IMG/VR virus record: IMGVR_UViG_3300049215_000771 | Location: 248,001 to 312,000 of that record | Length of the DNA: 64,000 bases | Reading direction: 5' to 3' (one strand) | Shown here: positions 1 through 51,795 of the stretch, piece after piece | Layout of the letters: every line of letters begins with the position of its first letter | Numbering within the stretch: the stretch's first letter is position 1 | Notes under the pieces: model-generated | Seen by the model: only the letters and a program-made list of their open reading frames with translations | Told to the model about the DNA's origin: nothing | The model's database searches: none | Position numbers and translations under genes: made by a program

Positions 1-123
1 GACGATCTGAAGGATATACCACCGACCCTCGATTTCCTTCAGGTCAGTGATACCCTTCGTCACGGGCTTGTTGCTGGAGCAGCCAACCAGGGCGAACAAG
101 ATGATGGGAAGTAACTTTCTCAC
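1..123 (-). CDS. Putative lipoprotein, N-terminal part (runs off window start)
   Basis: GTG start overlaps the lysS TGA (GTGA); translates MRKLLPIILFALVGCSSNK..., a basic N-terminus, hydrophobic core and LVGC lipobox. Confidence 0.6.
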   Translation of the reverse strand, partial: MRKLLPIILFALVGCSSNKPVTKGITDLKEIEGRWYILQIV

Positions 124-1744: not shown

Positions 1745-2347
1745 TTACTCGAACGTGTATGTCACGCCAACGTCGTACTTGAGTTCAGGGATGCCGATGT
1801 GGGTGCAAAGGTTATGTTTTTTCGCCTCCTTCGCCGTCAGATACCACTCGGCGTGGCCCTTGTCATGGATGATCTCGGTGAAATAGTTGTCGGGTTTGCC
1901 AACATTCTTCGAGATGATGGAGAAGATCAATTTATGCAATCTTTCCGTCTCCTTGGTGTCGGCTTTAACTTCTTCGACCTTTCCCCAGGAGGCGCTGGAA
2001 ACATCATGAAGCATCAGGGTGGCGTGTTTAGCCATGTAGCGTTGTTGGCCCATTGCGAACAACATGGCCCCGCAGGACATACCCTTTCCTTCAAGTACAG
2101 TAACAACAGGAAGGCTGGCCGACTGGATTTGGGCGATCATGTCGAGAAGGGAGTAGACCTGTCCGCCGTAGGAGTCGATGACGACGGGAATGACGGGTTG
2201 ATGGGTCTGGTGGGCCTTCTCCATTTCTTCGGTGAAGGCTTTGGCCCCATCTTGATCGAACTTGGTGACACGAACGATGACGGGTTGTGGCAGGAGTTCT
2301 TCGATCTTACCACGAATGCGAGGATCAACAGTAAGCGTGCGCCGCAT
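1745..2347 (-). CDS. clpP: ClpP-like serine protease
   Basis: IDSYGG, GMSCG (Ser), LMLHD (His), EWYLTAKEA matching the ClpP D-x-F-L-S-A-x-E-A segment. Confidence 0.85.
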   Translation of the reverse strand: MRRTLTVDPRIRGKIEELLPQPVIVRVTKFDQDGAKAFTEEMEKAHQTHQPVIPVVIDSYGGQVYSLLDMIAQIQSASLPVVTVLEGKGMSCGAMLFAMGQQRYMAKHATLMLHDVSSASWGKVEEVKADTKETERLHKLIFSIISKNVGKPDNYFTEIIHDKGHAEWYLTAKEAKKHNLCTHIGIPELKYDVGVTYTFE

Positions 2348-7061: not shown

Positions 7062-7685
7062 CTAAAATTCGTTGTGCTTCTGGAAGAGTACGTCGTGGAC
7101 GATCACCTTCTTCAAGTGATTCCCATACCGGCCCTTCCAGCGCTTTGCCATCATGCAGAACCGGCTGGTGTGTTCCGGGCGGTCCTCCCAAATTTCCAGA
7201 ACTTCCAGGTCTGAGTGAACGATCTCCCGCTCGATGAGTTCGATCTTGATCTCGAAAGTATCTCCGTGCTGCGGGTATCCCTTCATGCCACGGAAGTAAT
7301 ACTCGTCGAAGATCAGTTCCTTCACCGCCAGGATTTCCTTCACTCGATGCCGAATCTTGGCCGGACGACCCGTCATCAAGTAGCAGTTGGTGTCTTCCCT
7401 CGCCCGGTCAGCCTTGTAAGCAGCCAGCGTTTCAGAAATCCACATTTCCTCCGGGATCGGGTCCGGCACGAGCGGCGGCTGGAGCGTTTCGATCCGGCCC
7501 CACCAACCAGAAAACGGCCACAAGTTCCCCGTTTTCTCCAAGTACAGAACTTCTCCTTCGGGCCGATCCGGGGAGCGGAACAGCGTGCCGTCGAAGTCGT
7601 AAATGGAGGCACGGGAACGCTTTCGGACGTTCCGTGGAGCTTCAGCCCCAGGCAGCCACTTCGATAAGGTTTGTTCTTTGCTCAT
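7062..7685 (-). CDS. HAD phosphatase, Swiss-Army-Knife RNA-repair type (HAD_SAK_1-like)
   Basis: IYDFDGTLFRSP, WWG, LMTGR and IWEDR motifs; GGAGG RBS. Confidence 0.8.
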   Translation of the reverse strand: MSKEQTLSKWLPGAEAPRNVRKRSRASIYDFDGTLFRSPDRPEGEVLYLEKTGNLWPFSGWWGRIETLQPPLVPDPIPEEMWISETLAAYKADRAREDTNCYLMTGRPAKIRHRVKEILAVKELIFDEYYFRGMKGYPQHGDTFEIKIELIEREIVHSDLEVLEIWEDRPEHTSRFCMMAKRWKGRYGNHLKKVIVHDVLFQKHNEF

Positions 7686-7775: not shown

Positions 7776-8330
7776 TTACTTGCCGGCGTATCGAACCGTG
7801 ATGTCCATGCCTTCGTCGGTCGGGGTGATCTGGACCTGGAAACCATCGGGTCGGCGGGCGCTCATTTCGTTCATGGCGATAGCCCTAGCCTGTTTGATGG
7901 CCGAGTTCGGCTCGATATGACCGTGGACGTGGAAAACCCATGTGTTGGCCAGTGGGCGTTCTAGTGTGGCTTTGACGGTAGCATAACCACTACGGCCACC
8001 CTTCATCATGATGGTTTTACCTATTTTTTCCTTGACAGGTTCGGCTGGTGCGTCGGCGACATCGCTTTTGGGCATCTCTCCGACTGGCACACGAGGAGAT
8101 GTCCCATATGGCGTGTGAGTCGTGGCTGGATCGGCTGAGGCGACCATAGCGGGCCGGTCGGCGGCAGGAGAAGCAGGACGATTCATCAGTTTGTTCGCAC
8201 CCCAGGCGCTTGCGGCAAGTCCACCAAGGAGGCCCATTGTTTGTAGAAACTTGTTGTCCTTCAACGCCTCTACCAATTCAACATCCCTAACTTCCAACCA
8301 CTCGTTGAATGTTGGAAGTTTATTCTTCAT
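7776..8330 (-). CDS. Hypothetical protein with capsid-targeting-like leader and hydrophobic segment
   Basis: Start moved to MKNKLPTFNEWLEVRD; the longer ORF merely overlaps the upstream low-complexity tail. Confidence 0.6.
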   Translation of the reverse strand: MKNKLPTFNEWLEVRDVELVEALKDNKFLQTMGLLGGLAASAWGANKLMNRPASPAADRPAMVASADPATTHTPYGTSPRVPVGEMPKSDVADAPAEPVKEKIGKTIMMKGGRSGYATVKATLERPLANTWVFHVHGHIEPNSAIKQARAIAMNEMSARRPDGFQVQITPTDEGMDITVRYAGK

Positions 8331-29036: not shown

Positions 29037-30530
29037 ATGTCATCTTGCGAATTTGATTGTCTTGCACAATACCAATGCGGCCAAGTAGAGCAATTGCCGC
29101 CTGGTGCTATTTATGGTCCCTGGGTTCAGATCGGACTTTCAGGAGAAGGTACAAACATCACGGTCGGTAATCATTCCTCCCCACCAGACAACCACGCCTG
29201 CATCAAATCCTTCGAGTACGGATTCTCCGAGGGCGCTGGCATGAAGGTGGAAATTTACGACGAGGAAGGTAGCCGGCTTTCCACCTTCGTCAACCGCATC
29301 AGCAAAACTGTTTGCCAAGCACCAAATGACTACAAGCTGACGGTAAATTTTGGGTGGATCACTGTAGATTGCAATGGAAACACCAACATTATCAGCACCC
29401 AAAATTTCGGCAACACGTTGTACTTCCTCCCACTGAAAATCGAAGTGGCGTTCGAGAACGGCAAGATCAAATACACTATTGAAGGTACAGACCTTCAGGA
29501 CCGCATCTCGGAAACTCGTGTTGAAAACGCCCGTGGGACGGAAGACGCACGAGTGGATTTGAAAACAGCCATTCGTGAACTATTTGCCGATAGCTGTCCA
29601 AAAATTGACGACATTCGATTTACTGACGCCGAACATCCAGATGCGCCAGATGGATGGCACTTCAAAAACAGTGACGGCGGACCAAATGGACCGAGGGCAG
29701 TGTGGACTACAGACCAGCAGAATGCGATGGCGACAACGAGGAAATGGATTTCTCCTTTGCTCACGGAAAACGACAAAGGTGTAATCCTTCAGTGGAAACA
29801 AGATGAGGACCATCCGGTTCTGGTTTTGTTGGAAGACCCAAACCCGGCCCCGGACGAAAACGAAAGCTGCTGCGAGAACAGCATTGGCACCTACATCGTA
29901 AATGGAGGCAACTGCACTCCCGTTCTCGGATTCACACCACAGATCAATTGGGCATTGAGTTCCAACGCCGGCTCCGGTGGTCAGCAGGCGGGTGGCGCAT
30001 CTGCCAACAACCAGCAACAGGTCGGTAGGCCAGACTCCAACATTGAACGTGTTGGTACGCAAACACAATGGCCTGTGAATCAGAACGATAATATGTGGCG
30101 TCCACAAGACTTGATCGTTCACCGGGCACAAGAAGCTAACGCCGCTCACGAAGCCGCCAACCGCTTCCGTGAAGTTCCGCAAAGCATCAACGCCGAGTTG
30201 AAATTGATGGGTGATCCATCCCTAGCCTTCCCATTGGGCGGGTCTGGTTTGGTGGGCAAATCTGTCTCACTCGTCGTCATCAACCCTTTCTACATTCAGG
30301 AATGTGAATGGATCGCTCAACCTCCCTGTAACGAAATGTTGAGCAACAAAAGATGGATGATTATGGGAGCTAATCACCAAATTAGAGAAGGTTCTTACAC
30401 CACAACACTGAAGTTGTTCCTTGCTGTGCCGAACGTGGACCTGGAACCTGGTACGCCGCTTGGTGGACCTGGCTGTGGAAGATTGACCTTCGACAACGAC
30501 CGCAGCGGCGGCAACGACGAGGACAGCTAA
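29037..30530 (+). CDS. Baseplate hub protein (gp27/gpD-like)
   Basis: Between LysM and spike genes; C-terminal AELKLMGDP..WMIMGANHQI..SYTTTLKL. Confidence 0.7.
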   Translation: MSSCEFDCLAQYQCGQVEQLPPGAIYGPWVQIGLSGEGTNITVGNHSSPPDNHACIKSFEYGFSEGAGMKVEIYDEEGSRLSTFVNRISKTVCQAPNDYKLTVNFGWITVDCNGNTNIISTQNFGNTLYFLPLKIEVAFENGKIKYTIEGTDLQDRISETRVENARGTEDARVDLKTAIRELFADSCPKIDDIRFTDAEHPDAPDGWHFKNSDGGPNGPRAVWTTDQQNAMATTRKWISPLLTENDKGVILQWKQDEDHPVLVLLEDPNPAPDENESCCENSIGTYIVNGGNCTPVLGFTPQINWALSSNAGSGGQQAGGASANNQQQVGRPDSNIERVGTQTQWPVNQNDNMWRPQDLIVHRAQEANAAHEAANRFREVPQSINAELKLMGDPSLAFPLGGSGLVGKSVSLVVINPFYIQECEWIAQPPCNEMLSNKRWMIMGANHQIREGSYTTTLKLFLAVPNVDLEPGTPLGGPGCGRLTFDNDRSGGNDEDS

Positions 30531-32731
30531 TGTCAGTAGTAAGCCAACAACAATTCGCCAAACTCGAACAACGACTCAAAGAAATCGAAGTGCGATTCGG
30601 CAACATGCTGTACGATACTCGTGGTGTTGTACAATCAGAATTGAAAGACCGAATGATTGTTCACAGTCAGTCGGAATCTCAATTTGGGTTGTACACCGCC
30701 CTGTGCATCGACACCATTGACATTTGGAAACAAAATCGCATCAGGTTTTTCTGTCCGGCCTTCCACAATCCGAAGCGTCCGATCAAGGAGATGCCCTGGG
30801 CTTACCCTGTTTCCAACATGGGTGGTTTTGACGATTGTGGTTTGACTTGGGTTCCACCTGCTGGTTCAACTGTCTGCATCTTGTTTGAAGCGGGCCAGCG
30901 GTCATCGCCGTTCTACATTGGTACGACCTGGCATCGTAACCGTGGGCCGGGCGGCAACTTGTTTGGCTTCAACATTGACGAATACTACCGAGTTTGGGCT
31001 GGGCATCGTGGCGGCTATTTGGTAGGGCCGGATGACGAATCTCAGGTTTTCCCGCCGTGGAACACAGAAAACTACAACGGATTTGATCTTTCCTCCATCG
31101 TAGATTTCTCCTCCAACCCGGAGGCACAAAAACTAATCACCTATCCAAATATCTACGGCTTCAAAACACCTGAGAAGCACATGATAAAAATGACGGATGG
31201 TGATCCCAAGTGTAATCGACGATGGAAACGATTCGAGATCATGTCCGGTTGTGGCAACTGGATCATGTTGAAAGACGACCACCTTCATTACGCCGGACAG
31301 TGGGCGCATCCACAGTGCGGCGTCAAAGATGGTGAGACTTCCTGCGTACAAGGTGCGTCCAATAGCAGCGAAACCGACATCACCAGACAGCAGGGTTTAT
31401 CTCCTGATGGAACTACTGCGCATGACGTTCCGACTACAAGCGATCCAATCTCGAAACAATTTGCCGATGTAACAAGTTCAACCTTCCAGTCGGCCCCAAA
31501 AACTGAGAATACACCGTGCCAGGGAACGCACAGCAACAGCAGTATCATTGGAGGACATCCAGCAACATCTGCTGATGATTCGCCGTATATAAACTCTCAA
31601 GCCGGCGCTAATCCATTCTTCAAACATCAAAGCGAGTGCCGACCCTATCAGGGACCGGGCACGCCCCAAAACAACAGAATCGACTTACCGCAGTCTGGCA
31701 TTCAGATTATGTCGATTTCCGGCCACACCATTGTTATGGATGATTCAGTAGAAGAACCTTCCGGCGATCCACGTTGGGAACGTGGAATACAACCATTTGA
31801 TTTCGGTTGCAACAATCACTATTCCGGGCGAACGTACTGGAAGTCTGCCACAGGCCACTGCATTGAGATGCGGGATGTAGAAGACCCTCCACACGTCCAA
31901 AACGCTATGTTGCGTGGTGAATTCAACTTCATCAGGCTGCTGACGGCGACTGGCAACAAAATCGAACTAAACGACCACACTGTAGGTGCGCCGAACTGTC
32001 CTGGCTGTCCGCCAAACGTAGCTGGAAACAAGCGTGGCATCATGCTTGCCAGCACAGCGGGTCACACCATCGAGATGCACGACGAACTAAACCAACAGTG
32101 CGGTCCTTGTCGCATGGAAGGTGGCGTACCTGCTCCGATGGCGAACCCAGGAAACGCTTATGTGAGGATTAGGACGGGGTACGGACTGGAGATGATGTAT
32201 CACGACGACAACCGCCAAGACAAAACAGTTCAACAATACATTCAGATTTTCTGTCCGCAGAAAGACAACAAGGTTCGTGGGCCGCACATCATGAGGTTCC
32301 AGGAAGCACCATCTGGACCTGGATTGATTTTCTTGAGGGCTGGCGGAAACTACATCATCATGACCTACGATAACATGATTGAAATCGTAGGAGACATCAA
32401 GAAAAATCCTTCCGACAAGATCGAAATCATCAGCAAATTGAAGCTGGTGTACACCAAGGACTTCTATGTGAACGTAACTGAGAAGTCGCATGTATTTGTG
32501 GCGAAGAATGACATTCTCCTGTTGGCCGGATGTGATTGTTCATCACCGCAGTTCAACGAAATATGCGGTAGCAGTTGCGGCCCATGCGTTGGACCTGTGT
32601 TGGTTTATGTTGGCGGTTGCATCAGGTTGAGCGACCGCATATATGGTTCTTCTTCACTCAGCGCAACACCAGCTAACATCTTCATGTTGGAACCGCTGGT
32701 CAAGTGTCCGCAGGGTGGGGGCTGCGGCTAA
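30530..32731 (+). CDS. Baseplate central spike (gp5/VgrG OB-fold), Cys-rich
   Basis: RIRFFCP..PWAYP..G..WVPPAGSTVCILFEAGQRSSPFYIG OB-fold; repeated S/TGHxIxMxD beta-helix motifs. Confidence 0.8.
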   Translation: MSVVSQQQFAKLEQRLKEIEVRFGNMLYDTRGVVQSELKDRMIVHSQSESQFGLYTALCIDTIDIWKQNRIRFFCPAFHNPKRPIKEMPWAYPVSNMGGFDDCGLTWVPPAGSTVCILFEAGQRSSPFYIGTTWHRNRGPGGNLFGFNIDEYYRVWAGHRGGYLVGPDDESQVFPPWNTENYNGFDLSSIVDFSSNPEAQKLITYPNIYGFKTPEKHMIKMTDGDPKCNRRWKRFEIMSGCGNWIMLKDDHLHYAGQWAHPQCGVKDGETSCVQGASNSSETDITRQQGLSPDGTTAHDVPTTSDPISKQFADVTSSTFQSAPKTENTPCQGTHSNSSIIGGHPATSADDSPYINSQAGANPFFKHQSECRPYQGPGTPQNNRIDLPQSGIQIMSISGHTIVMDDSVEEPSGDPRWERGIQPFDFGCNNHYSGRTYWKSATGHCIEMRDVEDPPHVQNAMLRGEFNFIRLLTATGNKIELNDHTVGAPNCPGCPPNVAGNKRGIMLASTAGHTIEMHDELNQQCGPCRMEGGVPAPMANPGNAYVRIRTGYGLEMMYHDDNRQDKTVQQYIQIFCPQKDNKVRGPHIMRFQEAPSGPGLIFLRAGGNYIIMTYDNMIEIVGDIKKNPSDKIEIISKLKLVYTKDFYVNVTEKSHVFVAKNDILLLAGCDCSSPQFNEICGSSCGPCVGPVLVYVGGCIRLSDRIYGSSSLSATPANIFMLEPLVKCPQGGGCG

Positions 32732-37700: not shown

Positions 37701-37879
37701 TCCCGACCTATGACCGTGGAGGCCGTGAGGTTATTGACCAGCAAACCAACAACGATCCGCCTGTAGGTGTGTCGATGGTTGGCAAGGGTGCCGGTTTGAC
37801 AGAAGTTGTCGAGCAATCGGAGGGCATTAGTTTTGAAATCGAATGGGCCGATGGCTCGAAGGATCAGGGGAATATATGA
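34748..37879 (+). CDS. Baseplate wedge protein with Tail_P2_I-like domain (gp7-like)
   Basis: FLPLLARYFG..WRRQIKQAIPLFKKKGTIGGL..AL; follows the J gene. Confidence 0.75.
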   Translation: MATVAPDQNPQVLDTVLFNLPTPDANGCFLADPYMVNSVVVYFVERDFADLNENQYDNIIQDDAASAAADAAEAVACANPTAANIQQAKTLRSQANSLAFTSPFYYNDANPVTVVGNADYPAWLTTDQSNAFITHTGTGQFQYAWNSYGMREGDYFVCWTWTPNPAGDTISNSFKFNLAGNSVVTTSIPTHYTQPDKYYTLLTTYLPETYKTLITDTDRTPDVLDRFNQAVALGFTAVENLANQIVDLQDANSTAEAFLPLLARYFGITLKTQDPALWRRQIKQAIPLFKKKGTIGGLQEALAQAGIRMAKVTRLWQIISSYTWQDAFTYDGTNDTWELSKTPVMPIDPTNYAVYLRPEGQPSYMQLGTDYVSFGTDMDGNPTVTWAGSGLMIDPIDLVAGDIVKVLYVYKSVPDSPHQTIENYVRSLPLADQRDETKQQYPLKNWNVRLIEEDDPLFNVVIPDKFPFMDPLIYGKVRTEFPYSENAYNADEYNGSIRNSYNPCDIDKDFLDPCTACLGSKFNIDLEIENLSNNRILEAQDVILEFVPFHAQLQTMNFTGGITEFITPPLEEIEVLVSVSGGDFVLCGEGQMWFNRAMKGGLTTHIIDRSMLASSDIPISNQAGTAYNDYITIWSSSVLFDNIAMSTDGSALLEVFAPSPNAGTYNLSNPSRNTAVVTGATEPLNTSAFTFRLSNVLTSGTLCNIYQNNSVTLLDANNPFPSVLSLFDVTYNGATGPYTVLIPAYSATHYQVNSVFPDGSLELLDHGETLPTSNVTNVAYTLYDENGAVVSSSTTGGLTIAVRGRVQSLDSSIQDIHNMIRGTCYVVTGGSQYLIDGFVSPTDDAEFYIDGYAGGDMAGTTLTIYQRIVDNEIGYFSHRGLELQVSGNLETTLNIQNGANPPATPLENNDFMENYIVTINSQDYLISMINGNSPPGYTTITLAGPDNYWKTLGAGGTSVNFTVTHFTKETITVPGQQFDLPAHTFPTYDRGGREVIDQQTNNDPPVGVSMVGKGAGLTEVVEQSEGISFEIEWADGSKDQGNI

Positions 37880-38355
37880 GAGAAACACATAGCCCGTGTG
37901 AAGTGTACGGCCATGTCCAGGCGATCATCGACTACAAGTCTGGCGAGAGGGCCGTCATTGAGTTTCCGAACACCATTCTTCGCACGGGAAGGAATGCGTT
38001 GGCGGCTTCACTTGCCAATGATGTAGGAGGCCAGTTCAACTTCTATATCTCAAGGATGTTGTTCGGCGACGGCGGCACGGCGGGCGGCGTCGTTAAGTTC
38101 GTAGACACTGCCAGAAACGGGTTGTTTGGTATTACCCGTGCCAACAAGCCAGTTATTGCGCAGGTCGATCCGAACATTCCATCTCAGGTGATTTTCACTT
38201 CTGTCGTCGCCTACAGTGAGGCGAACGGTTACACTTTGAATGAGATGGCGTTGCAGATGAACACAGGGGATTTCTACAGTATGGTGACGTTCCCGGACCT
38301 AACCAAGACAGATCAGATGCAGATTACTTGGAATTGGAGGCTTTCCTTCGTATGA
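37876..38355 (+). CDS. Tail/baseplate fibre-attachment protein
   Basis: NTILRTGR..ISRMLFGDGG..EANG..LNEMAL..KT..ITWNWRL, typical of tail-collar/wedge proteins; ATGA coupling. Confidence 0.6.
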   Translation: MRETHSPCEVYGHVQAIIDYKSGERAVIEFPNTILRTGRNALAASLANDVGGQFNFYISRMLFGDGGTAGGVVKFVDTARNGLFGITRANKPVIAQVDPNIPSQVIFTSVVAYSEANGYTLNEMALQMNTGDFYSMVTFPDLTKTDQMQITWNWRLSFV

Positions 38356-38717
38356 AAAACTACTGGCTCGATAAGAAAAAGAACAACATTCCGACTTGCA
38401 AGGATTTGCAGGAAGCTACTGTTGATTTTCAGAACAACAGGACAACAAAAAACGCCGAGAGGCTATGCGAGATGTTCAAGGTTTTGGTGGAAACCATCTT
38501 GAAGTATTTCGGCGACAAGATCGACCTTGGGGACAGGAAGCAAGTTACTGTCGAGTGCATGGCGACGTGCTTTACCAAACTGAGGCGGTACAATCCACAG
38601 AAGGGGAAGGCGTTCAATTTCTTCACAACAATCATCCTGTCACACATGCGGCAGATATACAGAACGAGGAGGGCTTATGCGGAACTTTTGGCTCGACAAA
38701 ATAACAGAAAAAAGTAA
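38352..38717 (+). CDS. gp55-like sigma-factor region-2 protein with NYWLD leader
   Basis: CFTKLRRYNPQKGKAFNFFTTII matches the region 2.2-2.4 pattern of T4-type late sigma; starts MKNYWLDK. Confidence 0.65.
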   Translation: MKNYWLDKKKNNIPTCKDLQEATVDFQNNRTTKNAERLCEMFKVLVETILKYFGDKIDLGDRKQVTVECMATCFTKLRRYNPQKGKAFNFFTTIILSHMRQIYRTRRAYAELLARQNNRKK

Positions 38718-39084
38718 GGTGCAAACTTGGAACTTCGAGGAAGAACTGAAGAAAATGATGGACAAGGCAGCGATAACTTTGGAGATGCAGTCCGTGAAAG
38801 TCTTGCCGGAACCAAGCTCGACGGAAAACTTGGTGCGCCGTTGGAAGAGAATGGAAATCACTTCCCAATGCGGGCACAGTTGGTTCTTCGCCGACGAGAA
38901 TGCAAGCTGCGGCGCATGGGCGAAGCTGGTGGAGCGGCCCGATTATGGGGTTCCATTGCCGCAGGCATCCGTAAAGCAACAAGATGATGTGCTTCCACCC
39001 TGGAACACTGAAACCTACAACGGAATCGACCTGGAGAATACCGAAGAATTTACGCCGACAAACGGCTGGGAGTGCGATCTATGA
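38677..39084 (+). CDS. Mini-protein carrying spike-derived segments with NFWLD leader
   Basis: GAGGAGGG RBS; RRWKRMEITSQCG and PPWNTETYNGIDL match segments of the 30530 spike. Confidence 0.75.
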   Translation: MRNFWLDKITEKSKVQTWNFEEELKKMMDKAAITLEMQSVKVLPEPSSTENLVRRWKRMEITSQCGHSWFFADENASCGAWAKLVERPDYGVPLPQASVKQQDDVLPPWNTETYNGIDLENTEEFTPTNGWECDL

Positions 39085-39632
39085 AGAACTACTGGTTAGA
39101 CAGGAAAAAAAAGAAAGATTGCTACTGCGACAAATCCGACGAGGGAATGAGGAGGCGGGCAAAGTTGCAGACTGAGTACATGCGGCGTCGGATAGAACGC
39201 CTGCGAAACTTCACCAGGGCTTTGGCCACGGGCGGCTCGGTGGAGATCAATTGGGAAGCCATTGAGAAGGAGGAGCAGGAAGAAAAAATCAAGTTCGAGA
39301 TTCCTGAAATTCCGACCCCTGAAATTCCGCCAATCACAGTAATGTGGGACTTCAACACCCCGCCGCCTGAAATCAACATCCCGCCGATGGTATTCGGGAC
39401 CATCGACATCACTGGTACTGGAATAATGACTCAGATCGACATTTCGCCACCCGTCAATATACCGACTGAGATCAAACTGGTTGCTCCAGACCCGATGCCT
39501 GTCATCAAGGTGGAATGGGGTCTACCGCCTACCATTCCTTTGATAATCACGGATACGTCCGGGCCGATGGGGACCATGCCGTTGGACATTCCCAGCGTGA
39601 TTACGATAAACTCGCCGGAATACCGTATATAA
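39081..39632 (+). CDS. Mini-protein resembling the flanks of the 2048-aa fibre, with NYWLD leader
   Basis: ATGA coupling; NIPPMVF, PPVNIPTEI and VEWGLPPT match fibre NLPPIVF, PPINIPSEI and VNWGPAPT. Confidence 0.7.
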   Translation: MKNYWLDRKKKKDCYCDKSDEGMRRRAKLQTEYMRRRIERLRNFTRALATGGSVEINWEAIEKEEQEEKIKFEIPEIPTPEIPPITVMWDFNTPPPEINIPPMVFGTIDITGTGIMTQIDISPPVNIPTEIKLVAPDPMPVIKVEWGLPPTIPLIITDTSGPMGTMPLDIPSVITINSPEYRI

Positions 39633-39636
39633 CGAT

Positions 39637-40461
39637 ATGCCAGAACTTGATCTGTATCCAGTACCACTGTATAATCCACTGCACCCGTACCATTGGGAGT
39701 ACGACAACCTGCCGTTGCAGAATTTAATCCTTCGGGATGAAATCATCAACGGCCAGGTTGACTACAACTCAGGCATCTTGATGGATGCCGCTGGTACACA
39801 GGGCACATTGGCAAATCGGCTTGCGCAAAGCATCGACCCCAACGGCAGTCTCTTACTTGCCGCCGTCGATTCCGTGATGCACAACATAGCCGCTCACATT
39901 GACGGAACAGCCAATCTGTCTCCAACTGAGATTTCTTCTTTGGCGACACTTGGGTATGTTGTATCGAATCCAGTCCCGTATGTGAGAATGTTGAACGCAG
40001 AACGGGCCAAGCTATCCCTTATTGCTGATGAAGCAACGAACATGACGATTCAGGTGCAAACACCTTCTGTCACTGTTCTGTACACCCAGGGACCGATTAC
40101 CTTTGTTCCATCCGAAACAGTAACATGGTTCGTTTCAGGTAATCAGATACAGGCCAATTTGGGGTTCCCGATTGAAGCAGCACATCGTCACTACTACGAT
40201 CAGGAACCAGTAACGAGCGATTATCAGAACTATCAAACAACGTCGGTCAGCACACCATGTAGGGTGGGCACATTGCGAGTGTACATCAACGGCGTAAGAC
40301 TCAGTGAAACAGCAAACGTCTACGTTCCCTCAGCCATCATCTCGGCCCCGTGGACGCTGAACTCCTTCACGCCAAACGAAGAAGCTGGAACTTTCCAACT
40401 GGAAACTCCCATTACCGCCGCTGACATCATTCGCATCGACTTCGACATTGCTTTGACATAA
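39637..40461 (+). CDS. Tail/baseplate structural protein
   Basis: Beta-rich ORF in the tail operon; C-terminal LRVYINGVRL domain common in tail proteins. Confidence 0.6.
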   Translation: MPELDLYPVPLYNPLHPYHWEYDNLPLQNLILRDEIINGQVDYNSGILMDAAGTQGTLANRLAQSIDPNGSLLLAAVDSVMHNIAAHIDGTANLSPTEISSLATLGYVVSNPVPYVRMLNAERAKLSLIADEATNMTIQVQTPSVTVLYTQGPITFVPSETVTWFVSGNQIQANLGFPIEAAHRHYYDQEPVTSDYQNYQTTSVSTPCRVGTLRVYINGVRLSETANVYVPSAIISAPWTLNSFTPNEEAGTFQLETPITAADIIRIDFDIALT

Positions 40462-45648: not shown

Positions 45649-48600
45649 ATGGCTAATGGCTTTCCTCCAGTTCCGGTTTACCCTGCGGGGTACGATAGTG
45701 ACAAAACTCTGTATTTGGTTTACAACACAGCAGAAACAGTCACCACCCGTGATAATGCGCCCTGGTCTGAATTCATTCACATCAAACCAGTTGATTCCGA
45801 TGCAGATGAAATTTGGGCCAGCAATGGCTTCGCCAATATCGAAGGCGAACTGTTCTACTACGACGCCGTAGGTTACGACGAATTTGGCAAAGTAAACGTC
45901 CTGAAGCGATGCGCCAGGAACCTGGGCGGCTCGCACACTGTATGGAACCCGCAAGGCTCCGACGTTCGTGGTTTCGTCATTGCCGAACACCACAACCAAC
46001 TCGTGGAGGCCATTCTAAACACCCAGGGCTTCATTGGCTACAACTTCACGAATGACTGCTCCACACTTGACTGGAGGATTCGCCATCTCCAGGCTTTGCC
46101 GATCATCGACGATGATTCCAACTGCCCCACAATCGTTCTTGATGTACAAGTCATTAGCCAAGACCCAGCCCAGGGCACCGTCATCCAGTATGCCATTCTC
46201 ATCAATGGCCCATACACTGGATTCCGCCTGGATTTCGGTGACGGAGATTTTACAACCACAGCTACCAACGGATACCACCAATACGCCGCCAATGCGACCA
46301 TCGACCCAATCGTAACCATCGTCAACTCCAACTGCTCGGTAGTAACTTCGCCAATTCAGCGTACTATCGCCACTGAACCTGCGGTCGGGTCTGCTTTGAC
46401 GCCATTTGAAGTTACAATCCCAACGATACCTTCACTACCCCCAATTATTTTCCCGAACGTAATTCCACCATCGAACGCTTTCAACCTGCCGCCAATTGTG
46501 TTCCCGTGCTTGAACATTGGACCTATTGGCCCAATCAACATACCTTCTATCATCACTGTTGAACCACCGATCAACATACCTTCGGAGATTTTCATCACGC
46601 CGGTCACAATCCCGACCGAGATCACGATCACCCCAATCACGATCCCGACCGAGGTTGTCATCACCCCGATCACGATCCCAACACACATAACGATCTCGCC
46701 GGTTACGATCCCGACGCTGATTACTATCACGCCGGTTACGATCAGCCCAATTGACATTCCGACGTTAATCGTCATCACGCCGGTCAGCATCCCGACCGAA
46801 ATCGTCATCACGCCGGTCAGCATCCCGACCGAAATCGTCATCACGCCGGTCAGCATCCCGACATTGATTACGATTACGCCGGTCAACATCCCGAACGTCA
46901 TTACGATCACTCCGATCACAATCCCGAACATCAGGATCACACCGATCTCGATCCCGAACATCACGATCTCGCCGGTCAGCATCCCGACCGTTATCACGAT
47001 CACGCCGGTAACGATCCCGACTCAGATCACGTTCGGGCCAGTGACGATTCCGACTGCGATCACAATTACACCAGTGACGATTCCGACTGCAATCACAATT
47101 ACACCAGTCACAATCCCGACGACAATTACCATCACGCCGGTCAATATCCCGACGAACATTACCATTACGCCGGTCAATATCCCGACACAGATCACGTTCG
47201 GGCCAGTAACGATCCCGACACAGATCACGTTCGGGCCAGTAACGATCCCGACACAGATCACGTTCGGGCCAGTGACGATCCCGACTCAGATCACGATCAC
47301 TCCGATCACGATCCCGAACATCAGGATCACGCCGATCTCGATCCCGAACATCACGATCTCGCCGGTCAGCATCCCGACAACAATCACCATTACGCCGGTC
47401 AACATCCCGACAGTGATAACGATCACGCCGTTCCCGTGCAAAATTCCATCGCAGATCACGATCACTCCGGTCACGATCCCGACGAACATCACTATTACAC
47501 CAATTTCGATACCGAACATCAACATTTCACCGATTTCGATACCGACAAAGATCACAATTACACCAGTCACGATCCCGACGACAATTACCATCACGCCGGT
47601 CAATATCCCGACGAACATCACCATCACGCCGGTTGATATTCCGACGAACATCACCATCACGCCGGTCGCAATCCCGACGAACATCACGATTACGCCGGTC
47701 AACATCCCGACGTTGATTACCATTACGCCGGTCAACATCCCGACAACAATCACCATTACACCAGTGACGATCCCGACTCAGATCACGTTCGGGCCAGTGA
47801 CGATCCCGACTCAGATCACGATCACTCCGATCACGATCCCGAACATCAGGATCACGCCGATCTCGATCCCGAACATCACGATCTCGCCGGTCAGCATCCC
47901 GACAACAATCACCATTACGCCGGTCAACATCCCGACAGTGATAACGATCTCGCCGGTCAACATCCCGACAAACATAACGATCTCGCCGGTTACAATACCG
48001 ACTAACATCACCATTACACCTGTCACGATACCGACGAAGATCACCATTACGCCGGTTGACATCCCGACGAACATCACGATTACGCCGGTCAACATCCCGA
48101 CGTTGATTACCATTACGCCGGTCAACATCCCGACTCAGATCACGTTCGGGCCAGTGACAATCCCGACTCAGATCACGTTCGGACCAGTGACGATCCCGAC
48201 TCAGATCACGATCACTCCGATCACGATCCCGAACATCAGGATCACTCCGATCACGATCCCGAACATCACGATTACGCCGGTCAACATCCCGACGTTGATT
48301 ACCATCACGCCTGCCAACATCCCGACGAACATCACCATCACGCCGGTCAACATCCCGACAAACATCACCATTACGCCGGTTACAATACCGACTAACATCA
48401 CCATTACGCCGGTTACAATACCGACGAAGATCACCATCACTCCGGTCACGATCCCGACAGTGATAACGATCACTCCGGTCACGATCCCGACAGTGATAAC
48501 GATCACTCCGGTCACGATCCCGACAGTGATAACGATCACACCAGTTGACATCCCGACTGCAATCACGATCACTCCGGTTACAATCCCGACGAACATCACC

Positions 48601-51600
48601 ATTACGCCGGTAACGATTCCGACAACGATTACGATTACTCCAGTCACGATTCCGACAAAAATCACCATTACGCCGGTCAACATCCCGACGAACATCACCA
48701 TTACGCCGGTTACAATACCGACGAACATCACTATTACGCCGGTCAACATCCCGACGTTGATTACCATTACGCCGGTCACGATCCCGACGACAATTACCAT
48801 CACGCCGGTCACGATCCCGACAACAATCACCATTACGCCGGTCAACATCCCGACGTTGATTACCATTACGCCGGTCAACATCCCGACGTTGATTACCATT
48901 ACGCCGGTCACGATCCCGACTCAGATCACGTTCGGGCCAGTAACGATCCCGACTCAGATCACGTTCGGGCCAGTGACGATTCCGACTAAGATCACGATTA
49001 CACCGATCACGATTCCGGCAATCAGGATCACGCCGATCTCGATCCCGAATATCACGATTTCACCTGTAAACATCCCGACGACAATTACCATCACGCCGGT
49101 CAACATCCCGACAGCGATCACGATCACGCCAGTTGATATTCCGACAGCGATCACGATCACGCCAGTTGATATTCCGACAGCGATCACGATCACGCCAGTC
49201 AACATCCCAACGAACATCACCATTACGCCGGTCACGATACCGACAGCGATTACCATTACGCCGGTCACGATACCGACAAAGATTACCATTACGCCGGTCA
49301 ACATCCCGACGTTGATTGCGATCACGCCGGTCAACATCCCGACAAACATCACCATCACACCAGTTACGATCCCGACACGAATCACAATCACGCCGGTCAC
49401 GATCCCAACAGCGATCACGATCACGCCGGTCACGATCCCGACGACAATTACCATCACGCCGGTCAACATCCCAACAGCAATCACGATCACGCCGGTCAAC
49501 ATCCCGACTCAGATCACGTTCGGGCCAGTGACGATCCCGACTCAGATCACGTTCGGGCCGGTTACAATTCCGACCAAGATCACGATCACTCCGGTAACGA
49601 TCCCAAACATCAGGATCACACCGATCTCGATCCCGAACATCACGATTACTCCAGTTGATATTCCGACAGCGATCACGATCACGCCGGTCAACATCCCGAC
49701 AGCGATCACCATCACTCCAGTTGATATTCCAACAGCGATCACCATCACGCCGGTCAACATCCCGACAGCGATCACCATCACGCCGGTCAACATCCCGACA
49801 GCGATCACCATCACGCCGGTCACGATCCCGACGTTGATTACCATTACCCCTGTGATAATCCCGACGTTAATTACAATTACGCCGGTCACGATACCGACAA
49901 AAATCACCATCACGCCGGTCGCAATCCCGACGAACATCACCATTACACCGATCACGATCCCGACAGCGATCACTATTACGCCGGTTGATATTCCGACAGC
50001 GATCACTATTACGCCGGTCAACATCCCGACAGCGATCACTATTACGCCGGTCAACATCCCGACAGCGATCACGATCACGCCGGTCACGATCCCAACAGCG
50101 ATCACGATCACGCCGGTCAACATCCCGACAACAATCACCATTACGCCGGTCAACATCCCGACGTTGATTACCATTACACCAATTACAATCCCAACACAAA
50201 TTACGTTCGGACCAGTGACGATCCCGACTCAAATTACGTTCGGGCCAGTGACGATTCCGACTAAGATCACGATCACACCGATCACGATTCCGGCAATCAG
50301 GATCACGCCGATCTCGATCCCAAACATCATGATCTCGCCGATCTCGATACCGACAGTGATTACGATCTCGCCGGTCAATATCCCGACAGCGATCACGATC
50401 ACTCCAGTTGATATTCCGACAGCGATCACGATCACGCCAGTTGATATTCCGACAGCGATCACGATCACGCCGGTCACGATCCCAACAGCGATTACCATTA
50501 CGCCGGTCACGATCCCGACAGCGATTACCATTACGCCGGTCACGATACCGACAGCAATCACCATTACGCCGGTCAACATCCCGACGAGTATCACGATCAC
50601 GCCGATCACGATTCCTGCAATCACGATCACGCCGATCTCAATCCCGAATATCAACATTACGCCGATCTCGATCCCAGCGATCACGATCACACCGATCTCG
50701 ATCCCAGCGATCACGATCACACCGATCTCGATCCCAGCGATCACGATCACACCGATCTCGATTCCGAATGTGAACATCACGCCGATCACGATCCCAAATG
50801 TGAACATCACACCGATCTCGATCCCGGACATTAACATCACGCCGATCACGATCCCAAATGTGAACATCACACCGATCTCGATCCCGGACATTAACATCAC
50901 GCCGATCACGATTCCTGCAATCACGATCACGCCGATCTCGATTCCAGCAATCACGATCACACCGATCTCGATTCCGAATGTGAACATCACGCCGATCTCG
51001 ATACCGGACATCAATATCACGCCGATCACGATTCCTGCAATCACGATCACGCCGATCACGATCCCGGACATCAACATCACGCCGGTCACAATCCCGGACA
51101 TCAACGTGAATTGGGGACCAGCGCCAACAGTTACCTGCACGGTAACGGTGTCGTGTCCTTCTTCGCCGTCAACGACGCCATCTATGGGGTTCCTGGCGGG
51201 TGGGGTAGCTTTGCCGAGCGACTTCCAGGATGGCTTCTCACCGATTGAGGGAACGGTAGAGACAAGTGACATTGGCATTCCAACTGAAATTCAGTTGGTT
51301 GTGCCTGAAATCCCGGACATCCGAGTGATTCACGACATCCCGGCCATGATTGAGGTTGTGGCCCCGAAGATTCCGCCGATTGAGATCACGGGCTGGCAGA
51401 ACATCCCGAAGACCATCGAGGTCATTGCCACGGACATCCCGAAGACCATCGAGGTTGTGGGAGCGCACGCTATTCCGAAGTCGATCTCGATTGAGGGGGC
51501 GTCGAACATCCCAACCGTCATCAGGCTAGAAGTGCCTGTGGACTTCCCGAAGACGATTGTGCTGGACGCCAGCGGCATCCCGGACAAGATTCAAGTTGTC

Positions 51601-51795
51601 GGCATTCCGCCAGTCATTGAATTGATTGGCAACATCCCAACGGAAATCAAACTAACGATGCCTGAGAAACCGGAAGTAGAAATGGTATACAGGGGCGCTC
51701 CTATAGAGATGAAGATCAGCCTGGACACGAGCCGGCTGACAGGCGAGGATCAAAACGCCAACTGTGTAGCGATTGTCCCGTGCAAACCGAGCTAA
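45649..51795 (+). CDS. 2048-aa tail fibre-like protein with Ile/Pro/Thr repeat shaft
   Basis: HHN anchor plus PKD-like LDFGDG, about 1500 aa of 10-11-aa repeats, then a non-repetitive C-domain. Confidence 0.75.
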   Translation: MANGFPPVPVYPAGYDSDKTLYLVYNTAETVTTRDNAPWSEFIHIKPVDSDADEIWASNGFANIEGELFYYDAVGYDEFGKVNVLKRCARNLGGSHTVWNPQGSDVRGFVIAEHHNQLVEAILNTQGFIGYNFTNDCSTLDWRIRHLQALPIIDDDSNCPTIVLDVQVISQDPAQGTVIQYAILINGPYTGFRLDFGDGDFTTTATNGYHQYAANATIDPIVTIVNSNCSVVTSPIQRTIATEPAVGSALTPFEVTIPTIPSLPPIIFPNVIPPSNAFNLPPIVFPCLNIGPIGPINIPSIITVEPPINIPSEIFITPVTIPTEITITPITIPTEVVITPITIPTHITISPVTIPTLITITPVTISPIDIPTLIVITPVSIPTEIVITPVSIPTEIVITPVSIPTLITITPVNIPNVITITPITIPNIRITPISIPNITISPVSIPTVITITPVTIPTQITFGPVTIPTAITITPVTIPTAITITPVTIPTTITITPVNIPTNITITPVNIPTQITFGPVTIPTQITFGPVTIPTQITFGPVTIPTQITITPITIPNIRITPISIPNITISPVSIPTTITITPVNIPTVITITPFPCKIPSQITITPVTIPTNITITPISIPNINISPISIPTKITITPVTIPTTITITPVNIPTNITITPVDIPTNITITPVAIPTNITITPVNIPTLITITPVNIPTTITITPVTIPTQITFGPVTIPTQITITPITIPNIRITPISIPNITISPVSIPTTITITPVNIPTVITISPVNIPTNITISPVTIPTNITITPVTIPTKITITPVDIPTNITITPVNIPTLITITPVNIPTQITFGPVTIPTQITFGPVTIPTQITITPITIPNIRITPITIPNITITPVNIPTLITITPANIPTNITITPVNIPTNITITPVTIPTNITITPVTIPTKITITPVTIPTVITITPVTIPTVITITPVTIPTVITITPVDIPTAITITPVTIPTNITITPVTIPTTITITPVTIPTKITITPVNIPTNITITPVTIPTNITITPVNIPTLITITPVTIPTTITITPVTIPTTITITPVNIPTLITITPVNIPTLITITPVTIPTQITFGPVTIPTQITFGPVTIPTKITITPITIPAIRITPISIPNITISPVNIPTTITITPVNIPTAITITPVDIPTAITITPVDIPTAITITPVNIPTNITITPVTIPTAITITPVTIPTKITITPVNIPTLIAITPVNIPTNITITPVTIPTRITITPVTIPTAITITPVTIPTTITITPVNIPTAITITPVNIPTQITFGPVTIPTQITFGPVTIPTKITITPVTIPNIRITPISIPNITITPVDIPTAITITPVNIPTAITITPVDIPTAITITPVNIPTAITITPVNIPTAITITPVTIPTLITITPVIIPTLITITPVTIPTKITITPVAIPTNITITPITIPTAITITPVDIPTAITITPVNIPTAITITPVNIPTAITITPVTIPTAITITPVNIPTTITITPVNIPTLITITPITIPTQITFGPVTIPTQITFGPVTIPTKITITPITIPAIRITPISIPNIMISPISIPTVITISPVNIPTAITITPVDIPTAITITPVDIPTAITITPVTIPTAITITPVTIPTAITITPVTIPTAITITPVNIPTSITITPITIPAITITPISIPNINITPISIPAITITPISIPAITITPISIPAITITPISIPNVNITPITIPNVNITPISIPDINITPITIPNVNITPISIPDINITPITIPAITITPISIPAITITPISIPNVNITPISIPDINITPITIPAITITPITIPDINITPVTIPDINVNWGPAPTVTCTVTVSCPSSPSTTPSMGFLAGGVALPSDFQDGFSPIEGTVETSDIGIPTEIQLVVPEIPDIRVIHDIPAMIEVVAPKIPPIEITGWQNIPKTIEVIATDIPKTIEVVGAHAIPKSISIEGASNIPTVIRLEVPVDFPKTIVLDASGIPDKIQVVGIPPVIELIGNIPTEIKLTMPEKPEVEMVYRGAPIEMKISLDTSRLTGEDQNANCVAIVPCKPS
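46570..51110 (+). repeat. Tandem 33/30-bp repeat array
   Basis: Units IPTxITITPV(T/N/D), IPTQITFGPVT and IPxIxITPI(S/T); roughly 140 units from span divided by unit length. Confidence 0.95.

What the first reader, a model, noticed from the sequence alone, without database searches (positions are those of the whole stretch)
38352..39632. Three-gene cassette with a shared N-terminal leader M-[KR]-N-[YF]-W-L-D-[KR] fused to fragments of essential phage proteins
Seen: three consecutive overlapping ORFs inserted in the tail operon start MKNYWLDKKK (38352), MRNFWLDKIT (38677) and MKNYWLDRKK (39081). Their codons differ (atgaaaaactactggctcgat / atgcggaacttttggctcgac / atgaagaactactggttagac), so the peptide appears to be conserved rather than the DNA. 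After the leader they are unrelated: a sigma region-2 core, pieces of this phage's spike, and a miniature of its fibre. No other ORF in the window has this leader. Inference: a modular 'tag + mimic' system in which the leader is a docking or degron tag and each payload copies an oligomerisation or recognition surface. It could act as a decoy for host sensors of phage proteins, as a dominant-negative poison for co-infecting relatives, or as an assembly regulator (a ClpP is encoded at 1745). I know of no described system of this form.
Basis: partly seen in the sequence, partly recalled or inferred. Interest (0 to 1): 0.88.

Follow-up and report, generated by a model that had tools for sequence, protein, structure and literature searches.

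The report
Shared ten-residue tag on phage mini-proteins
Three small genes inserted in a giant phage's baseplate operon all start with the same ten-residue peptide, which turns out to be a portable tag found on about ninety different small proteins of related huge phages, some of them miniature copies of virion parts; no paper found here describes it and its function is untested.

Summary
ORFs 38352-38717, 38677-39084 and 39081-39632 start M[KR]N[YF]WLD[KR]; the motif occurs nowhere else in six frames (4e-6 expected by chance).

The peptide is conserved, not the DNA: synonymous sites vary freely. dN/dS is 0.08-0.2 for most cassette genes.

- ORF1 is a complete region-2-only sigma factor of the T4 gp55 type, not a fragment.
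- ORF2 carries permuted segments of the phage's hub/spike (aa 170-275).
- ORF3 is a short version of the 2048-aa repeat fibre, with a match to its start cap and weaker resemblance to its end cap.

The tag is far more widespread than one cassette. Pattern scans found 89 distinct tagged small ORFs (median 75 aa, 46 payload families) in contigs of 22-57% GC. Many come from 340-670 kb phages, often in tandem arrays. Other payloads include portal and prohead-protease fragments and a full PDDEXK nuclease.

The tag is gained and lost on orthologous payloads and is predicted disordered. The cassette is missing at the same site in a related 595-kb phage.

Best reading: a portable docking tag, most like T4's 10-residue capsid-targeting sequence. 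The partner and the function are untested. I found no published description.

The parts
38352..38717 (+). ORF1, 121 aa: tag, a variable linker of about 6-8 aa, then a four-helix region-2-only sigma factor of the gp55 type.
   Evidence: Homologs at 48-73% identity keep the tag. AF2 mean pLDDT is 85, with helices at 16-28, 32-53, 62-79 and 87-120 and residues 1-8 below pLDDT 50. Foldseek top hits are sigma region 2, and T4 gp55 (7d7c_F) has the best TM-score, 0.64. NCBIfam gives weak sigma matches over aa 12-97.
38352..38381 (+). Tag copy 1, MKNYWLDKKK.
   Evidence: Its ATG overlaps the TGA of the upstream gene.
38677..39084 (+). ORF2, 135 aa: tag, a W[DN]F helix module, hub-like modules (RRWKRxEI..S..GH and PPWNTETYNG.DL), and a conserved C-terminus GWECDL.
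   Evidence: Family alignments A2 and A5. Matches to hub aa 170-194 and 230-274. The AF2 monomer has low confidence, pLDDT 57. dN/dS is 0.20 against the L057 ortholog.
38677..38706 (+). Tag copy 2, MRNFWLDKIT, encoded inside the 3' end of ORF1 (41-nt dual-coding overlap, 38677-38717).
   Evidence: The same overlap is present in L002 and L004.
39081..39632 (+). ORF3, 183 aa: tag, a basic Cys-containing helical stretch, then a miniature of the fibre's repeat region (start cap, a few IP-type repeats and a weaker end-cap-like stretch).
   Evidence: An ortholog, P0017, is 73% identical.
39081..39110 (+). Tag copy 3, MKNYWLDRKK.
   Evidence: Its ATG overlaps ORF2's TGA.
30530..32731 (+). Hub/spike protein, 733 aa, with a Phage_base_V OB domain: the full-length parent of ORF2's hub-like modules.
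   Evidence: Pfam PF04717, E 4e-8. Motif positions.
45649..51795 (+). Fibre-like protein, 2048 aa, with roughly 140 tandem 11-residue repeats (ITITPVxIPTx, estimated by eye): the full-length parent of ORF3's payload.
   Evidence: Sequence listing and BLAST.
37843..38355 (+). Upstream baseplate-operon gene, tail-collar-fibre N-terminal-like (context; left border of the variable slot).
   Evidence: Pfam PF12571 E 1e-4 and PHROG 5417 E 1e-9.
39637..40461 (+). Downstream 274-aa gene (context). In relatives a tagged ORF2-type gene lies directly, or one small ORF, upstream of its homolog.
1745..2347 (-). ClpP-family protease gene (context only; candidate partner under the degron rival).
   Evidence: Pfam CLP_protease E 1.1e-17.

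Best explanation
The cassette is a local cluster of a large, apparently undescribed family of phage 'tagged mini-proteins'. Each member has a 10-residue N-terminal peptide, M-K-N-[YF]-W-L-[DE]-[KR]-K-x. The tag is disordered and is selected as a peptide. It can be added to or lost from a payload.

Shown: in this window the tag marks three accessory genes inserted into a variable slot of the baseplate operon, with no separate promoter detected and tightly overlapping junctions. They are a gp55-type sigma factor, a mini-protein built from hub segments, and a miniature of the repeat fibre.

Inferred: the tag is a short linear docking motif that routes many different small proteins to one common receptor. 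The most likely receptor is a component of the assembling virion. The tag would then work like the 10-residue capsid-targeting sequence of the T4 internal proteins. The payloads would be built into the particle and some delivered to the next cell. That would include the sigma factor, the nuclease and small nucleic-acid-binder-like proteins. The hub-, fibre-, portal- and protease-derived minis would co-assemble with or cap their full-length parents.
For: Tag is real and selected as a peptide:
- It occurs three times in the window against 4e-6 expected.
- Across 68 tagged genes the synonymous sites are free (AAC 35 / AAT 33, six Leu codons, GAC 27 / GAT 28), while M, N, W and L are near-invariant.
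- Host contigs range from 22 to 57% GC.

It is N-terminal:
- A scan with a pattern lacking ATG still found about 11 distinct cases directly after a start Met. About 6 non-start hits are roughly what I estimate chance would give.
- 55 of 89 tagged ORFs have an in-frame stop within 10 codons upstream.

It is portable:
- There are 46 unrelated payload clusters among 89 ORFs.
- The PDDEXK nuclease of L050 reads MKNYWLDRKK followed by MDDLEIDDIF. Its 53%-identical ortholog in LR756511 starts MEDFFTEDDF, without the tag.
- The sigma homolog in LR756511 also lacks the tag, although that genome has a tagged gene elsewhere (L129:3001-3240).

It is disordered: pLDDT is below 50 for residues 1-8 of ORF1.

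The genes are functional: dN/dS is 0.08-0.2 for most cassette genes (0.59 for the N-terminal half of ORF3), similar to the flanking structural genes.

Late co-expression:
- Junctions are ATGA overlaps and no promoter or terminator signal exceeds chance.
- Synteny holds in L002, L004, L045 and L057.
- The site is empty in LR756511.

T4-type context:
- gp25, Tail_P2_I and Phage_base_V domains are present.
- A Portal_T4-type portal gene is present in the clade.

Precedent: in T4, unrelated and hypervariable internal proteins share only a 10-residue N-terminal targeting sequence (PMC9026906; PMC3012670).

Tandem hypervariable arrays occur: 6 in L073, 4 in L002 and L004, 3 in L118.
Against: - There is no direct evidence of virion incorporation or of any binding partner.
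- The tag shares only M-K-x-Y with the T4 sequence (T4 letters from my own knowledge). It lacks the T4 protease site [LI]-x-E; it has W-L-[DE] instead. In T4, Asp at the cleavage position blocks processing.
- A tag common to head-derived fragments (portal, protease) and tail-derived ones (hub, fibre) is not predicted by capsid targeting alone.
- In other genomes tagged genes sit among small genes of unknown function near ligase and nucleotide-metabolism genes, not near structural genes.
- gp55 of T4 is not a virion protein.
- ORF1 lacks gp55's C-terminal clamp-binding segment, so the tag could instead replace that motif.
Confidence: 0.35

Rival explanations
1. The tag is a degradation or adaptor signal, and the minis are microProtein-like regulators. 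The tag would deliver its bearers, and possibly whatever they bind, to a protease such as the phage ClpP with a host or phage unfoldase. That would give timed turnover of a sigma factor, a nuclease and assembly caps.
For: - The tag is N-terminal and disordered, with an aromatic/hydrophobic core flanked by Lys.
- A ClpP-family gene lies in the window.
- The payloads are proteins for which limited lifetime is plausible.
- The ORF2 monomer is predicted largely unfolded, as expected for a binder that folds on its partner.
Against: - No unfoldase or adaptor was identified.
- Co-occurrence of ClpP with the tag was not tested.
- No known degron matches were shown.
- Strong conservation of W5, L6 and an acidic residue at position 7 across very different hosts would require a conserved receptor, presumably phage-encoded.
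Confidence: 0.18
2. The tag docks its bearers on the DNA-transaction hub used in T4 late transcription and packaging: the sliding clamp, the terminase or RNA polymerase. It would be the N-terminal counterpart of the terminal clamp-binding motif that T4 gp55 and gp33 share.
For: - ORF1 has the gp55 region-2 fold but only four helices. It lacks gp55's H5 and the C-terminal clamp-binding segment.
- Tagless sigma relatives have a similar N-terminal segment, MVKKHYVDNKR. This suggests the tag may derive from the gp55-family N-terminus.
- T4 gp55 also binds terminase gp17.
- A resolvase-type nuclease is a plausible client of a clamp or packaging motor.
Against: - Hub, fibre, portal and protease mini-copies, and dozens of tiny proteins of unknown function, are odd clients for a clamp.
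- The tag does not resemble known clamp-binding motifs.
- The N-terminus of T4 gp55 is poorly conserved and has no assigned role.
Confidence: 0.17
3. The minis would be decoys for host immune sensors of phage structural proteins, or dominant-negative poisons of co-infecting relatives. The tag would serve only as a common handle.
For: - Some payloads copy the most conserved segments of portal, prohead protease and hub. All 63 records matched by the 51-aa L073 mini were listed under LR756511 or T4-type cyanophages, and every annotated match shown was a portal gene. The Pfam Portal_T4 match scores 22.3 bits. L039 is 51% identical to the hub over 68 aa.
- The minis evolve much faster than their parents. 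Hubs are near-identical between the window and L002 over aa 141-300 by eye, while ORF2 orthologs are 29-50% identical.
- Arrays are tandem and hypervariable.
Against: - Only 4-5 of 46 payload clusters resemble virion proteins.
- There are no PADLOC hits, and no sensor or target has been identified.
- Self-poisoning would have to be avoided.
- ORF2-type genes hold a conserved place in the baseplate operon, which fits an assembly role.
Confidence: 0.15
4. The tag has no docking role. It would be an expression-optimised start region, or a by-product of duplication and overprinting of the sigma gene's ends.
For: - An A-rich MKN start is common in well-expressed genes (own knowledge).
- The tag's DNA read one base earlier gives YEELLARQ, which is the real C-terminus of ORF1 where ORF2 overlaps it.
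- Neighbouring tagged genes may have arisen by tandem duplication.
Against: - Y/F4, W5, L6, D/E7 and K/R8 are kept with free synonymous sites across 22-57% GC and 46 payload families.
- The alternative frame has a stop at ORF1's own tag.
- The tag is added to orthologs as a clean 10-residue prefix.
Confidence: 0.07
5. The leader is simply the ordinary N-terminus of one dispersed gene family.
For: Some payload modules recur (WDF, WKRxE..GH, LTRYGKK), and the largest cluster has 12 members.
Against: - There are 46 payload clusters with no detectable mutual similarity.
- The payloads include a sigma fold, a PDDEXK nuclease and beta-rich fibre repeats.
- The tag is present or absent on orthologs.
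Confidence: 0.03

Closest known systems
Capsid-targeting sequence (CTS) of the T4 internal proteins IPI, IPII, IPIII and Alt
   Same: Both are about 10-residue N-terminal peptides shared by otherwise unrelated, small, fast-evolving proteins of a T4-type myovirus. Both are portable, since foreign proteins can be targeted by the T4 sequence. Both tagged gene sets are clustered and variable (PMC9026906, PMC3012670).
   Different: Only M-K-x-Y is shared (T4 letters from my own knowledge). The T4 cleavage site [LI]-x-E is absent. There are many more bearers per genome (at least 9). The bearers include a sigma factor and miniature copies of tail and head proteins. This cassette sits in the baseplate operon. 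Packaging is unproven.
Shared terminal sliding-clamp-binding motif of T4 gp55 and gp33
   Same: Unrelated small proteins, including the gp55-type sigma, carry the same short disordered terminal peptide to dock on one partner.
   Different: The T4 motif is C-terminal and has a different sequence. Here the motif is N-terminal and is also found on structural-protein fragments. ORF1 lacks the gp55 C-terminal segment.
MicroProteins of plants and animals (e.g. Id, LITTLE ZIPPER)
   Same: Both are small proteins derived from part of a larger oligomerising protein. They keep an interaction segment and lack the rest, so they could titrate or cap the parent.
   Different: MicroProteins have no shared tag. 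Here the parents are virion proteins rather than transcription factors. No interaction has been shown.
Encapsulin cargo-loading peptides
   Same: Both are short terminal peptides that route diverse cargo. The encapsulin peptides route cargo into a shell with the HK97 fold.
   Different: Encapsulin peptides are usually C-terminal with a different sequence, and the system is cellular.

Membership tests
T4-type capsid-targeting sequence / internal proteins | An N-terminal peptide of about 10 residues shared by otherwise unrelated small proteins | tested here: met
   89 tagged ORFs in 46 payload clusters. The tag is a clean 10-residue prefix on the L050 nuclease relative to its tagless ortholog.
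T4-type capsid-targeting sequence / internal proteins | Sequence similarity to the T4 CTS and a prohead-protease site [LI]-x-E at its end | tested here: not met
   Only M-K-x-Y is shared (T4 letters from my own knowledge). The tag ends W-L-[DE]-[KR]-K, and no conserved [LI]-x-E follows.
T4-type capsid-targeting sequence / internal proteins | Incorporation into the prohead core and ejection with the DNA | not testable with these tools
   Needs virion proteomics or reporter fusions.
T4-type capsid-targeting sequence / internal proteins | T4-type head morphogenesis genes (gp20 portal, S77 protease) in the same lineage | tested here: inconclusive
   A T4-type portal gene is present in the related LR756511, and portal- and protease-like fragments occur on tagged minis. 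The head genes of this phage lie outside the window.
gp55-type late sigma factor (ORF1) | A small protein consisting of a sigma region-2 fold only | tested here: met
   AF2 gives four helices at pLDDT 85. Foldseek top hits are sigma region 2, and 7d7c_F (T4 gp55) scores TM 0.64/0.57. Sequence matches are weak.
gp55-type late sigma factor (ORF1) | A C-terminal helix-loop-helix and a sliding-clamp-binding motif | tested here: not met
   ORF1 ends after the long fourth helix with LARQNNRKK and has no hydrophobic C-terminal motif.
gp55-type late sigma factor (ORF1) | Use of TATAAATA-type late promoters | tested here: inconclusive
   One TATAAATA in 64 kb against 0.25 expected. This phage's promoter consensus may differ.
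Phage_base_V / gp5-type hub (ORF2) | An OB-fold injector domain and a trimeric spike body | tested here: not met
   ORF2 has no Pfam match. It shares only hub segments aa 170-194 and 230-274, in permuted order. It is a derivative, not a member.
Diversity-generating retroelement template/variable repeat (considered for ORF3 versus the fibre) | Near-identical DNA copies that differ at adenines | tested here: not met
   Similarity is only 33-41% at the protein level, and no DNA repeat is implied.
RiPP precursor peptides with a common leader | A leader of 20 or more residues with a cleavage site, short cores, and an adjacent modifying enzyme | tested here: not met
   The tag is 10 residues. The payloads include folded domains (sigma, PDDEXK). 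The neighbours examined are baseplate genes or genes without Pfam matches; none was identified as a modifying enzyme.
MicroProteins (concept) | A small protein that keeps only an interaction segment of a larger oligomeric parent encoded in the same genome | tested here: met
   ORF2 versus the hub and ORF3 versus the fibre in the same window.
MicroProteins (concept) | Acts by binding and titrating the parent | not testable with these tools
   No multimer prediction or experiment is available here.

The most novel reading that the evidence does not exclude
'Tag plus mimic' would be a virus-encoded targeted-interference system. Each mini-protein would bind the oligomerisation surface of a full-length protein. 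That protein could be its own parent, the homolog of a co-infecting phage, or a host sensor that recognises it. The shared tag would recruit one common effector, for example the phage ClpP machinery or a sequestering structure. One receptor would then act on many targets chosen by interchangeable mimic modules.
Probability: 0.15. Interest if true: 0.95.

Novelty: new variant of a known kind. Interest (0 to 1): 0.8.

Why it matters
Huge phages are almost all uncultured and most of their small genes have no known function. A single 10-residue tag that defines about ninety small proteins, at least nine of them in one 390-kb contig, gives a handle on a whole class of these genes. Find the receptor and many functions become testable at once.

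If the tag targets proteins to the virion, it would show that the T4 trick of loading arbitrary cargo into the particle is widespread and has evolved with a different peptide. It would also provide a new short tag for engineering phage cargo in laboratory systems. The cargo would include an injected sigma factor.

If instead the mini-copies of portal, protease, hub and fibre titrate their parents, this would be, as far as I know, the first microProtein-type regulation described in phage assembly.

Tried and rejected
- DNA similarity of the region to 50,697 phage records: none.
- Pfam, PHROGs, NCBIfam and PADLOC on the three ORFs: nothing for ORF2 and ORF3, only weak sigma hits for ORF1.
- PDB sequence search with the ORF1 profile: coiled-coil noise, with one sigma factor at E 0.13. 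The fold search was more useful.
- A profile of the 32-residue N-termini against 1.84 billion representatives: only 9 proteins pass E 1e-3 because the motif is short. The tag starts all nine; P0018 also carries a second copy at residue 24. The search added little.
- AF2 of ORF2: pLDDT 57, pTM 0.21. It is not usable for fold search and is taken only as a hint of disorder.
- Literature search for the peptide letters and for related concepts: no hits.
- Genome-contig scan: 21 hits, mostly chance or internal to cellular genes, plus a few probable phage contigs in MAG bins. It gave no sign of a host protein with the tag.
- tblastn of further payloads (L031, L037) against cultured phages: nothing.
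- Ideas rejected: a DGR template, RiPP leaders, and a single gene family (see the membership table).
- Programmed frameshifting at the ORF1/ORF2 overlap was considered. The YEELLARQ alternative frame is largely dictated by the tag's codons and is closed by a stop at ORF1's own tag, so there is no support.
- Ascertainment caveat: most loci were fetched with a pattern that fixed M1, N3, W5, K9 and partly the other positions. Conservation of those positions in my set is therefore partly by construction. The evidence free of that bias is the following:
  - orthologs found by protein search;
  - extra tagged ORFs next to the pattern hits;
  - the ATG-free scan.
Full report
**1. The observation**

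The + strand carries three consecutive ORFs: 38352-38717 (121 aa), 38677-39084 (135 aa) and 39081-39632 (183 aa). They begin MKNYWLDKKK, MRNFWLDKIT and MKNYWLDRKK. A six-frame search finds M[KR]N[YF]WLD[KR] only at these three starts. The window's own residue frequencies predict 4.4e-6 occurrences. The three DNA versions differ at synonymous sites.

The genes are tightly packed. ORF1's ATG overlaps the stop of the upstream tail-collar-like gene. ORF2 begins 41 nt inside ORF1. ORF3's ATG overlaps ORF2's stop. The next gene starts 4 nt after ORF3. No promoter-like or terminator-like site exceeds chance between 37.0 and 41.5 kb. The cassette therefore most likely shares its transcript with the baseplate genes. 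These are the Phage_base_V hub at 30530, a gp25-like gene, and a Tail_P2_I protein at 34748.

**2. What the three proteins are**

*ORF1.* It has homologs at 48-73% identity that keep the tag. More distant 117-aa homologs start MVKKHYVDNKR, and one source names one of them a specialised sigma subunit.
- AF2 gives a confident four-helix bundle (pLDDT 85), with residues 1-8 below pLDDT 50.
- Foldseek against the PDB returns sigma region-2 structures almost exclusively. T4 gp55 (7d7c_F) has the best TM-scores, 0.64/0.57, although E-values are weak.
- gp55 has five helices plus a C-terminal clamp-binding segment. ORF1 stops after the long fourth helix.
- ORF1 is thus a complete, minimal gp55-type sigma factor, not a fragment.

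*ORF2.* It belongs to a family with a conserved tag, a V..W[DN]F helix and a conserved C-terminus GWE[CL]DL.
- Two of its segments match this phage's own hub. ORF2 aa 102-126 matches hub aa 170-194 (52% identity, E 1e-7). ORF2 aa 54-101 matches hub aa 230-274 (E 1e-5). Their order is swapped.
- A relative (P0014) carries a third hub piece, YGFKTPEKH..DGDP.
- As a monomer ORF2 is predicted with low confidence, pLDDT 57.

*ORF3.* Its C-terminal half matches the 2048-aa protein at 45649-51795. That protein consists of roughly 140 tandem 11-residue repeats, estimated by eye.
- The best composition-corrected match is to the cap just before the array, aa 241-316, E 8e-4.
- Relatives of ORF3 and other tagged minis (L046, L121) match the end cap of the array, xIxWGxxPxVxCxVxVxCP. 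L046 gives E 8e-6.

**3. Relatives and selection**

- Syntenic contigs L002 and L004 carry four tagged genes in the same slot: sigma, a 50-aa gene, an ORF2-type gene and an ORF3-type gene.
- L057 carries the same three genes as the window.
- In the 40%-GC relative L045 the slot holds two untagged genes, a tagged ORF2-type gene and a 64-aa ORF.
- In L120 and L122 a 37-aa tagged gene ending EWILDV sits directly before the homolog of the 274-aa gene.
- In the 595-kb phage LR756511 the collar-like gene is followed directly by the homolog of the window's 179-aa gene. Neither the cassette nor the 274-aa gene is present.
- The slot is therefore variable and the cassette is accessory.
- dN/dS is 0.08-0.20 for the cassette genes, like the flanking structural genes. 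The exception is 0.59 for the N-terminal half of ORF3.

**4. The tag is widespread and portable**

A degenerate DNA pattern for the tag was scanned in viral, metagenome and genome collections.
- Translating the loci gave 89 distinct tagged ORFs of at least 35 aa. Of these, 79 are complete, with a median of 75 aa and a range of 35-290 aa. They fall into 46 payload clusters.
- The contigs range from 22 to 57% GC. They include pieces of phage genomes of 343, 373, 381, 390/590 and 532/673 kb.
- One 390-kb contig has at least 9 tagged genes at 4 or more loci. L073 has six in a row within 2.5 kb.
- Synonymous positions are used freely, and a purine-rich SD-like stretch precedes 47 of 68 starts.
- A scan with a pattern that did not include ATG still found the motif mainly right after a start Met.

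The tag comes and goes on orthologs.
- The PDDEXK nuclease of L050 (Pfam E 5e-26) reads MKNYWLDRKK followed by MDDLEIDDIF. Its 53%-identical ortholog in LR756511 begins MEDFFTEDDF. Cultured-phage homologs align only from residue 20-27 onward.
- LR756511's sigma homolog also lacks the tag, yet that genome has a tagged gene elsewhere.

**5. Other payloads**

- A 51-aa mini, L073:563-715, matches Portal_T4 at 22.3 bits. In tblastn all 63 matching records were listed under LR756511 or T4-type cyanophages, and every annotated match shown was a portal gene.
- A 48-aa mini (L060) matches positions 41-75 of the prohead protease S77 (Pfam E 3e-4). One alignment member, presumably this one, matches PHROG 'head maturation protease' at 1.4e-6.
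- A 164-aa mini (L039) is 51% identical to the hub over 68 aa, E 4e-15.
- Most of the other payload families have no detectable relatives of known function.

**6. How it most likely works**

*Shown.* This is a short, disordered N-terminal tag under peptide-level selection. It is portable and marks many small proteins. Here it marks three accessory genes that sit inside the baseplate operon with overlapping junctions and no separate promoter detected.

*Inferred.* The tag is a docking motif for one common receptor. I favour a virion-assembly receptor (confidence 0.35) for four reasons:
- The closest precedent is the T4 capsid-targeting sequence. It is 10 N-terminal residues, and it is the only thing shared by diverse, fast-evolving internal proteins.
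- The lineage has T4-type morphogenesis genes.
- The cassette is tightly embedded among the structural genes.
- A sigma gene embedded in a structural (presumably late) operon fits a factor made late for the next infection better than the activator of that same operon.

*Against.* The sequence differs from the T4 tag. There is no [LI]-x-E site. Both head- and tail-derived minis carry the same tag. Some tagged genes lie in non-structural regions.

*Rivals.* These are a degron or adaptor signal, a clamp, terminase or RNA-polymerase docking motif, decoy or dominant-negative roles for the mimic payloads, and an expression artefact. The docking rival draws on three points: ORF1 lacks gp55's clamp-binding end, T4 gp55 binds terminase, and tagless sigma relatives have a similar N-terminal segment. 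The rivals are listed with their tests in the Rival explanations section.

**7. Novelty**

No paper in the searched library contains the peptide or describes such a family. The kind of architecture, a short targeting tag plus variable cargo, is known. This tag, its breadth in huge phages, and its attachment to miniature copies of hub, fibre, portal and protease are, as far as I can tell, undescribed.

Noticed in passing
window 38677-38717; L002 9852-9886: The tag of ORF2 is encoded inside the last 41 nt of ORF1. Read one base earlier, the tag DNA gives YAELLARQ, which is ORF1's real C-terminal helix. The same dual coding is kept in L002 and L004. At the other tags the same alternative frame reads YEELL[AV]RQ but is not part of a gene.
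   Followed up: partly
window 14499-28160: A single 4553-aa ORF lies upstream of the baseplate genes. It is probably a giant tail or tape-measure-like protein. It was not analysed.
   Followed up: no
window 45649-51795: The 2048-aa protein has roughly 140 near-perfect 11-residue repeats (ITITPVxIPTx, counted by eye), with distinct start and end caps and a C-terminal domain of about 200 aa.
   Followed up: partly
window 120-1673, 1745-2347, 7062-7685, 8320-10047 (all - strand): The window carries translation and RNA-repair type genes typical of huge phages: a class II aminoacyl-tRNA synthetase (Asp/Lys/Asn type), a ClpP-family protease, a HAD domain of RNA-repair proteins and a poly(A)-polymerase/CCA-adding head domain.
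   Followed up: partly
L131, L134, L136-L138, L142, L143, L145, L149, L152-L154 (a variant in L148): Thirteen viral contigs of 31-32% GC (5-63 kb) carry a near-identical small ORF, usually 24 aa, MNYWLDKKKQEEEKYKKTTVNITL. It is a tag variant without Lys2 and has almost no payload.
   Followed up: no
ORF2 family C-termini (window 39064-39081; L002, L004, L045, L120): ORF2-type proteins keep both ends: the tag and a C-terminal [GE]W[EDI][CLY]D[LV]. The shortest member is 37 aa, just the tag, a charged linker and the C-terminal motif. This suggests a two-ended tether. The C-terminal codons also supply the SD-like GGGAG for the next gene.
   Followed up: partly
L012 about 7095-7116: A perfect TATAAATA (the T4 late-promoter consensus) lies 4 nt upstream of the ATG of a tagged ORF in the 390-kb contig. 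In the window the octamer occurs only once, at 63423.
   Followed up: no
L045 1415-2241 (- strand): In the 40%-GC relative the same baseplate slot holds two unrelated untagged genes (178 aa and 97 aa) in place of the sigma gene. The slot therefore behaves as a cargo site for late-expressed accessory genes.
   Followed up: no
L037 1712-2516: Three small genes lie in a row: a tagged mini with a portal-like motif, a tagged protease-like mini and an untagged K/E-rich 119-aa protein. The order recalls portal, protease, scaffold in the T4 head gene cluster.
   Followed up: no
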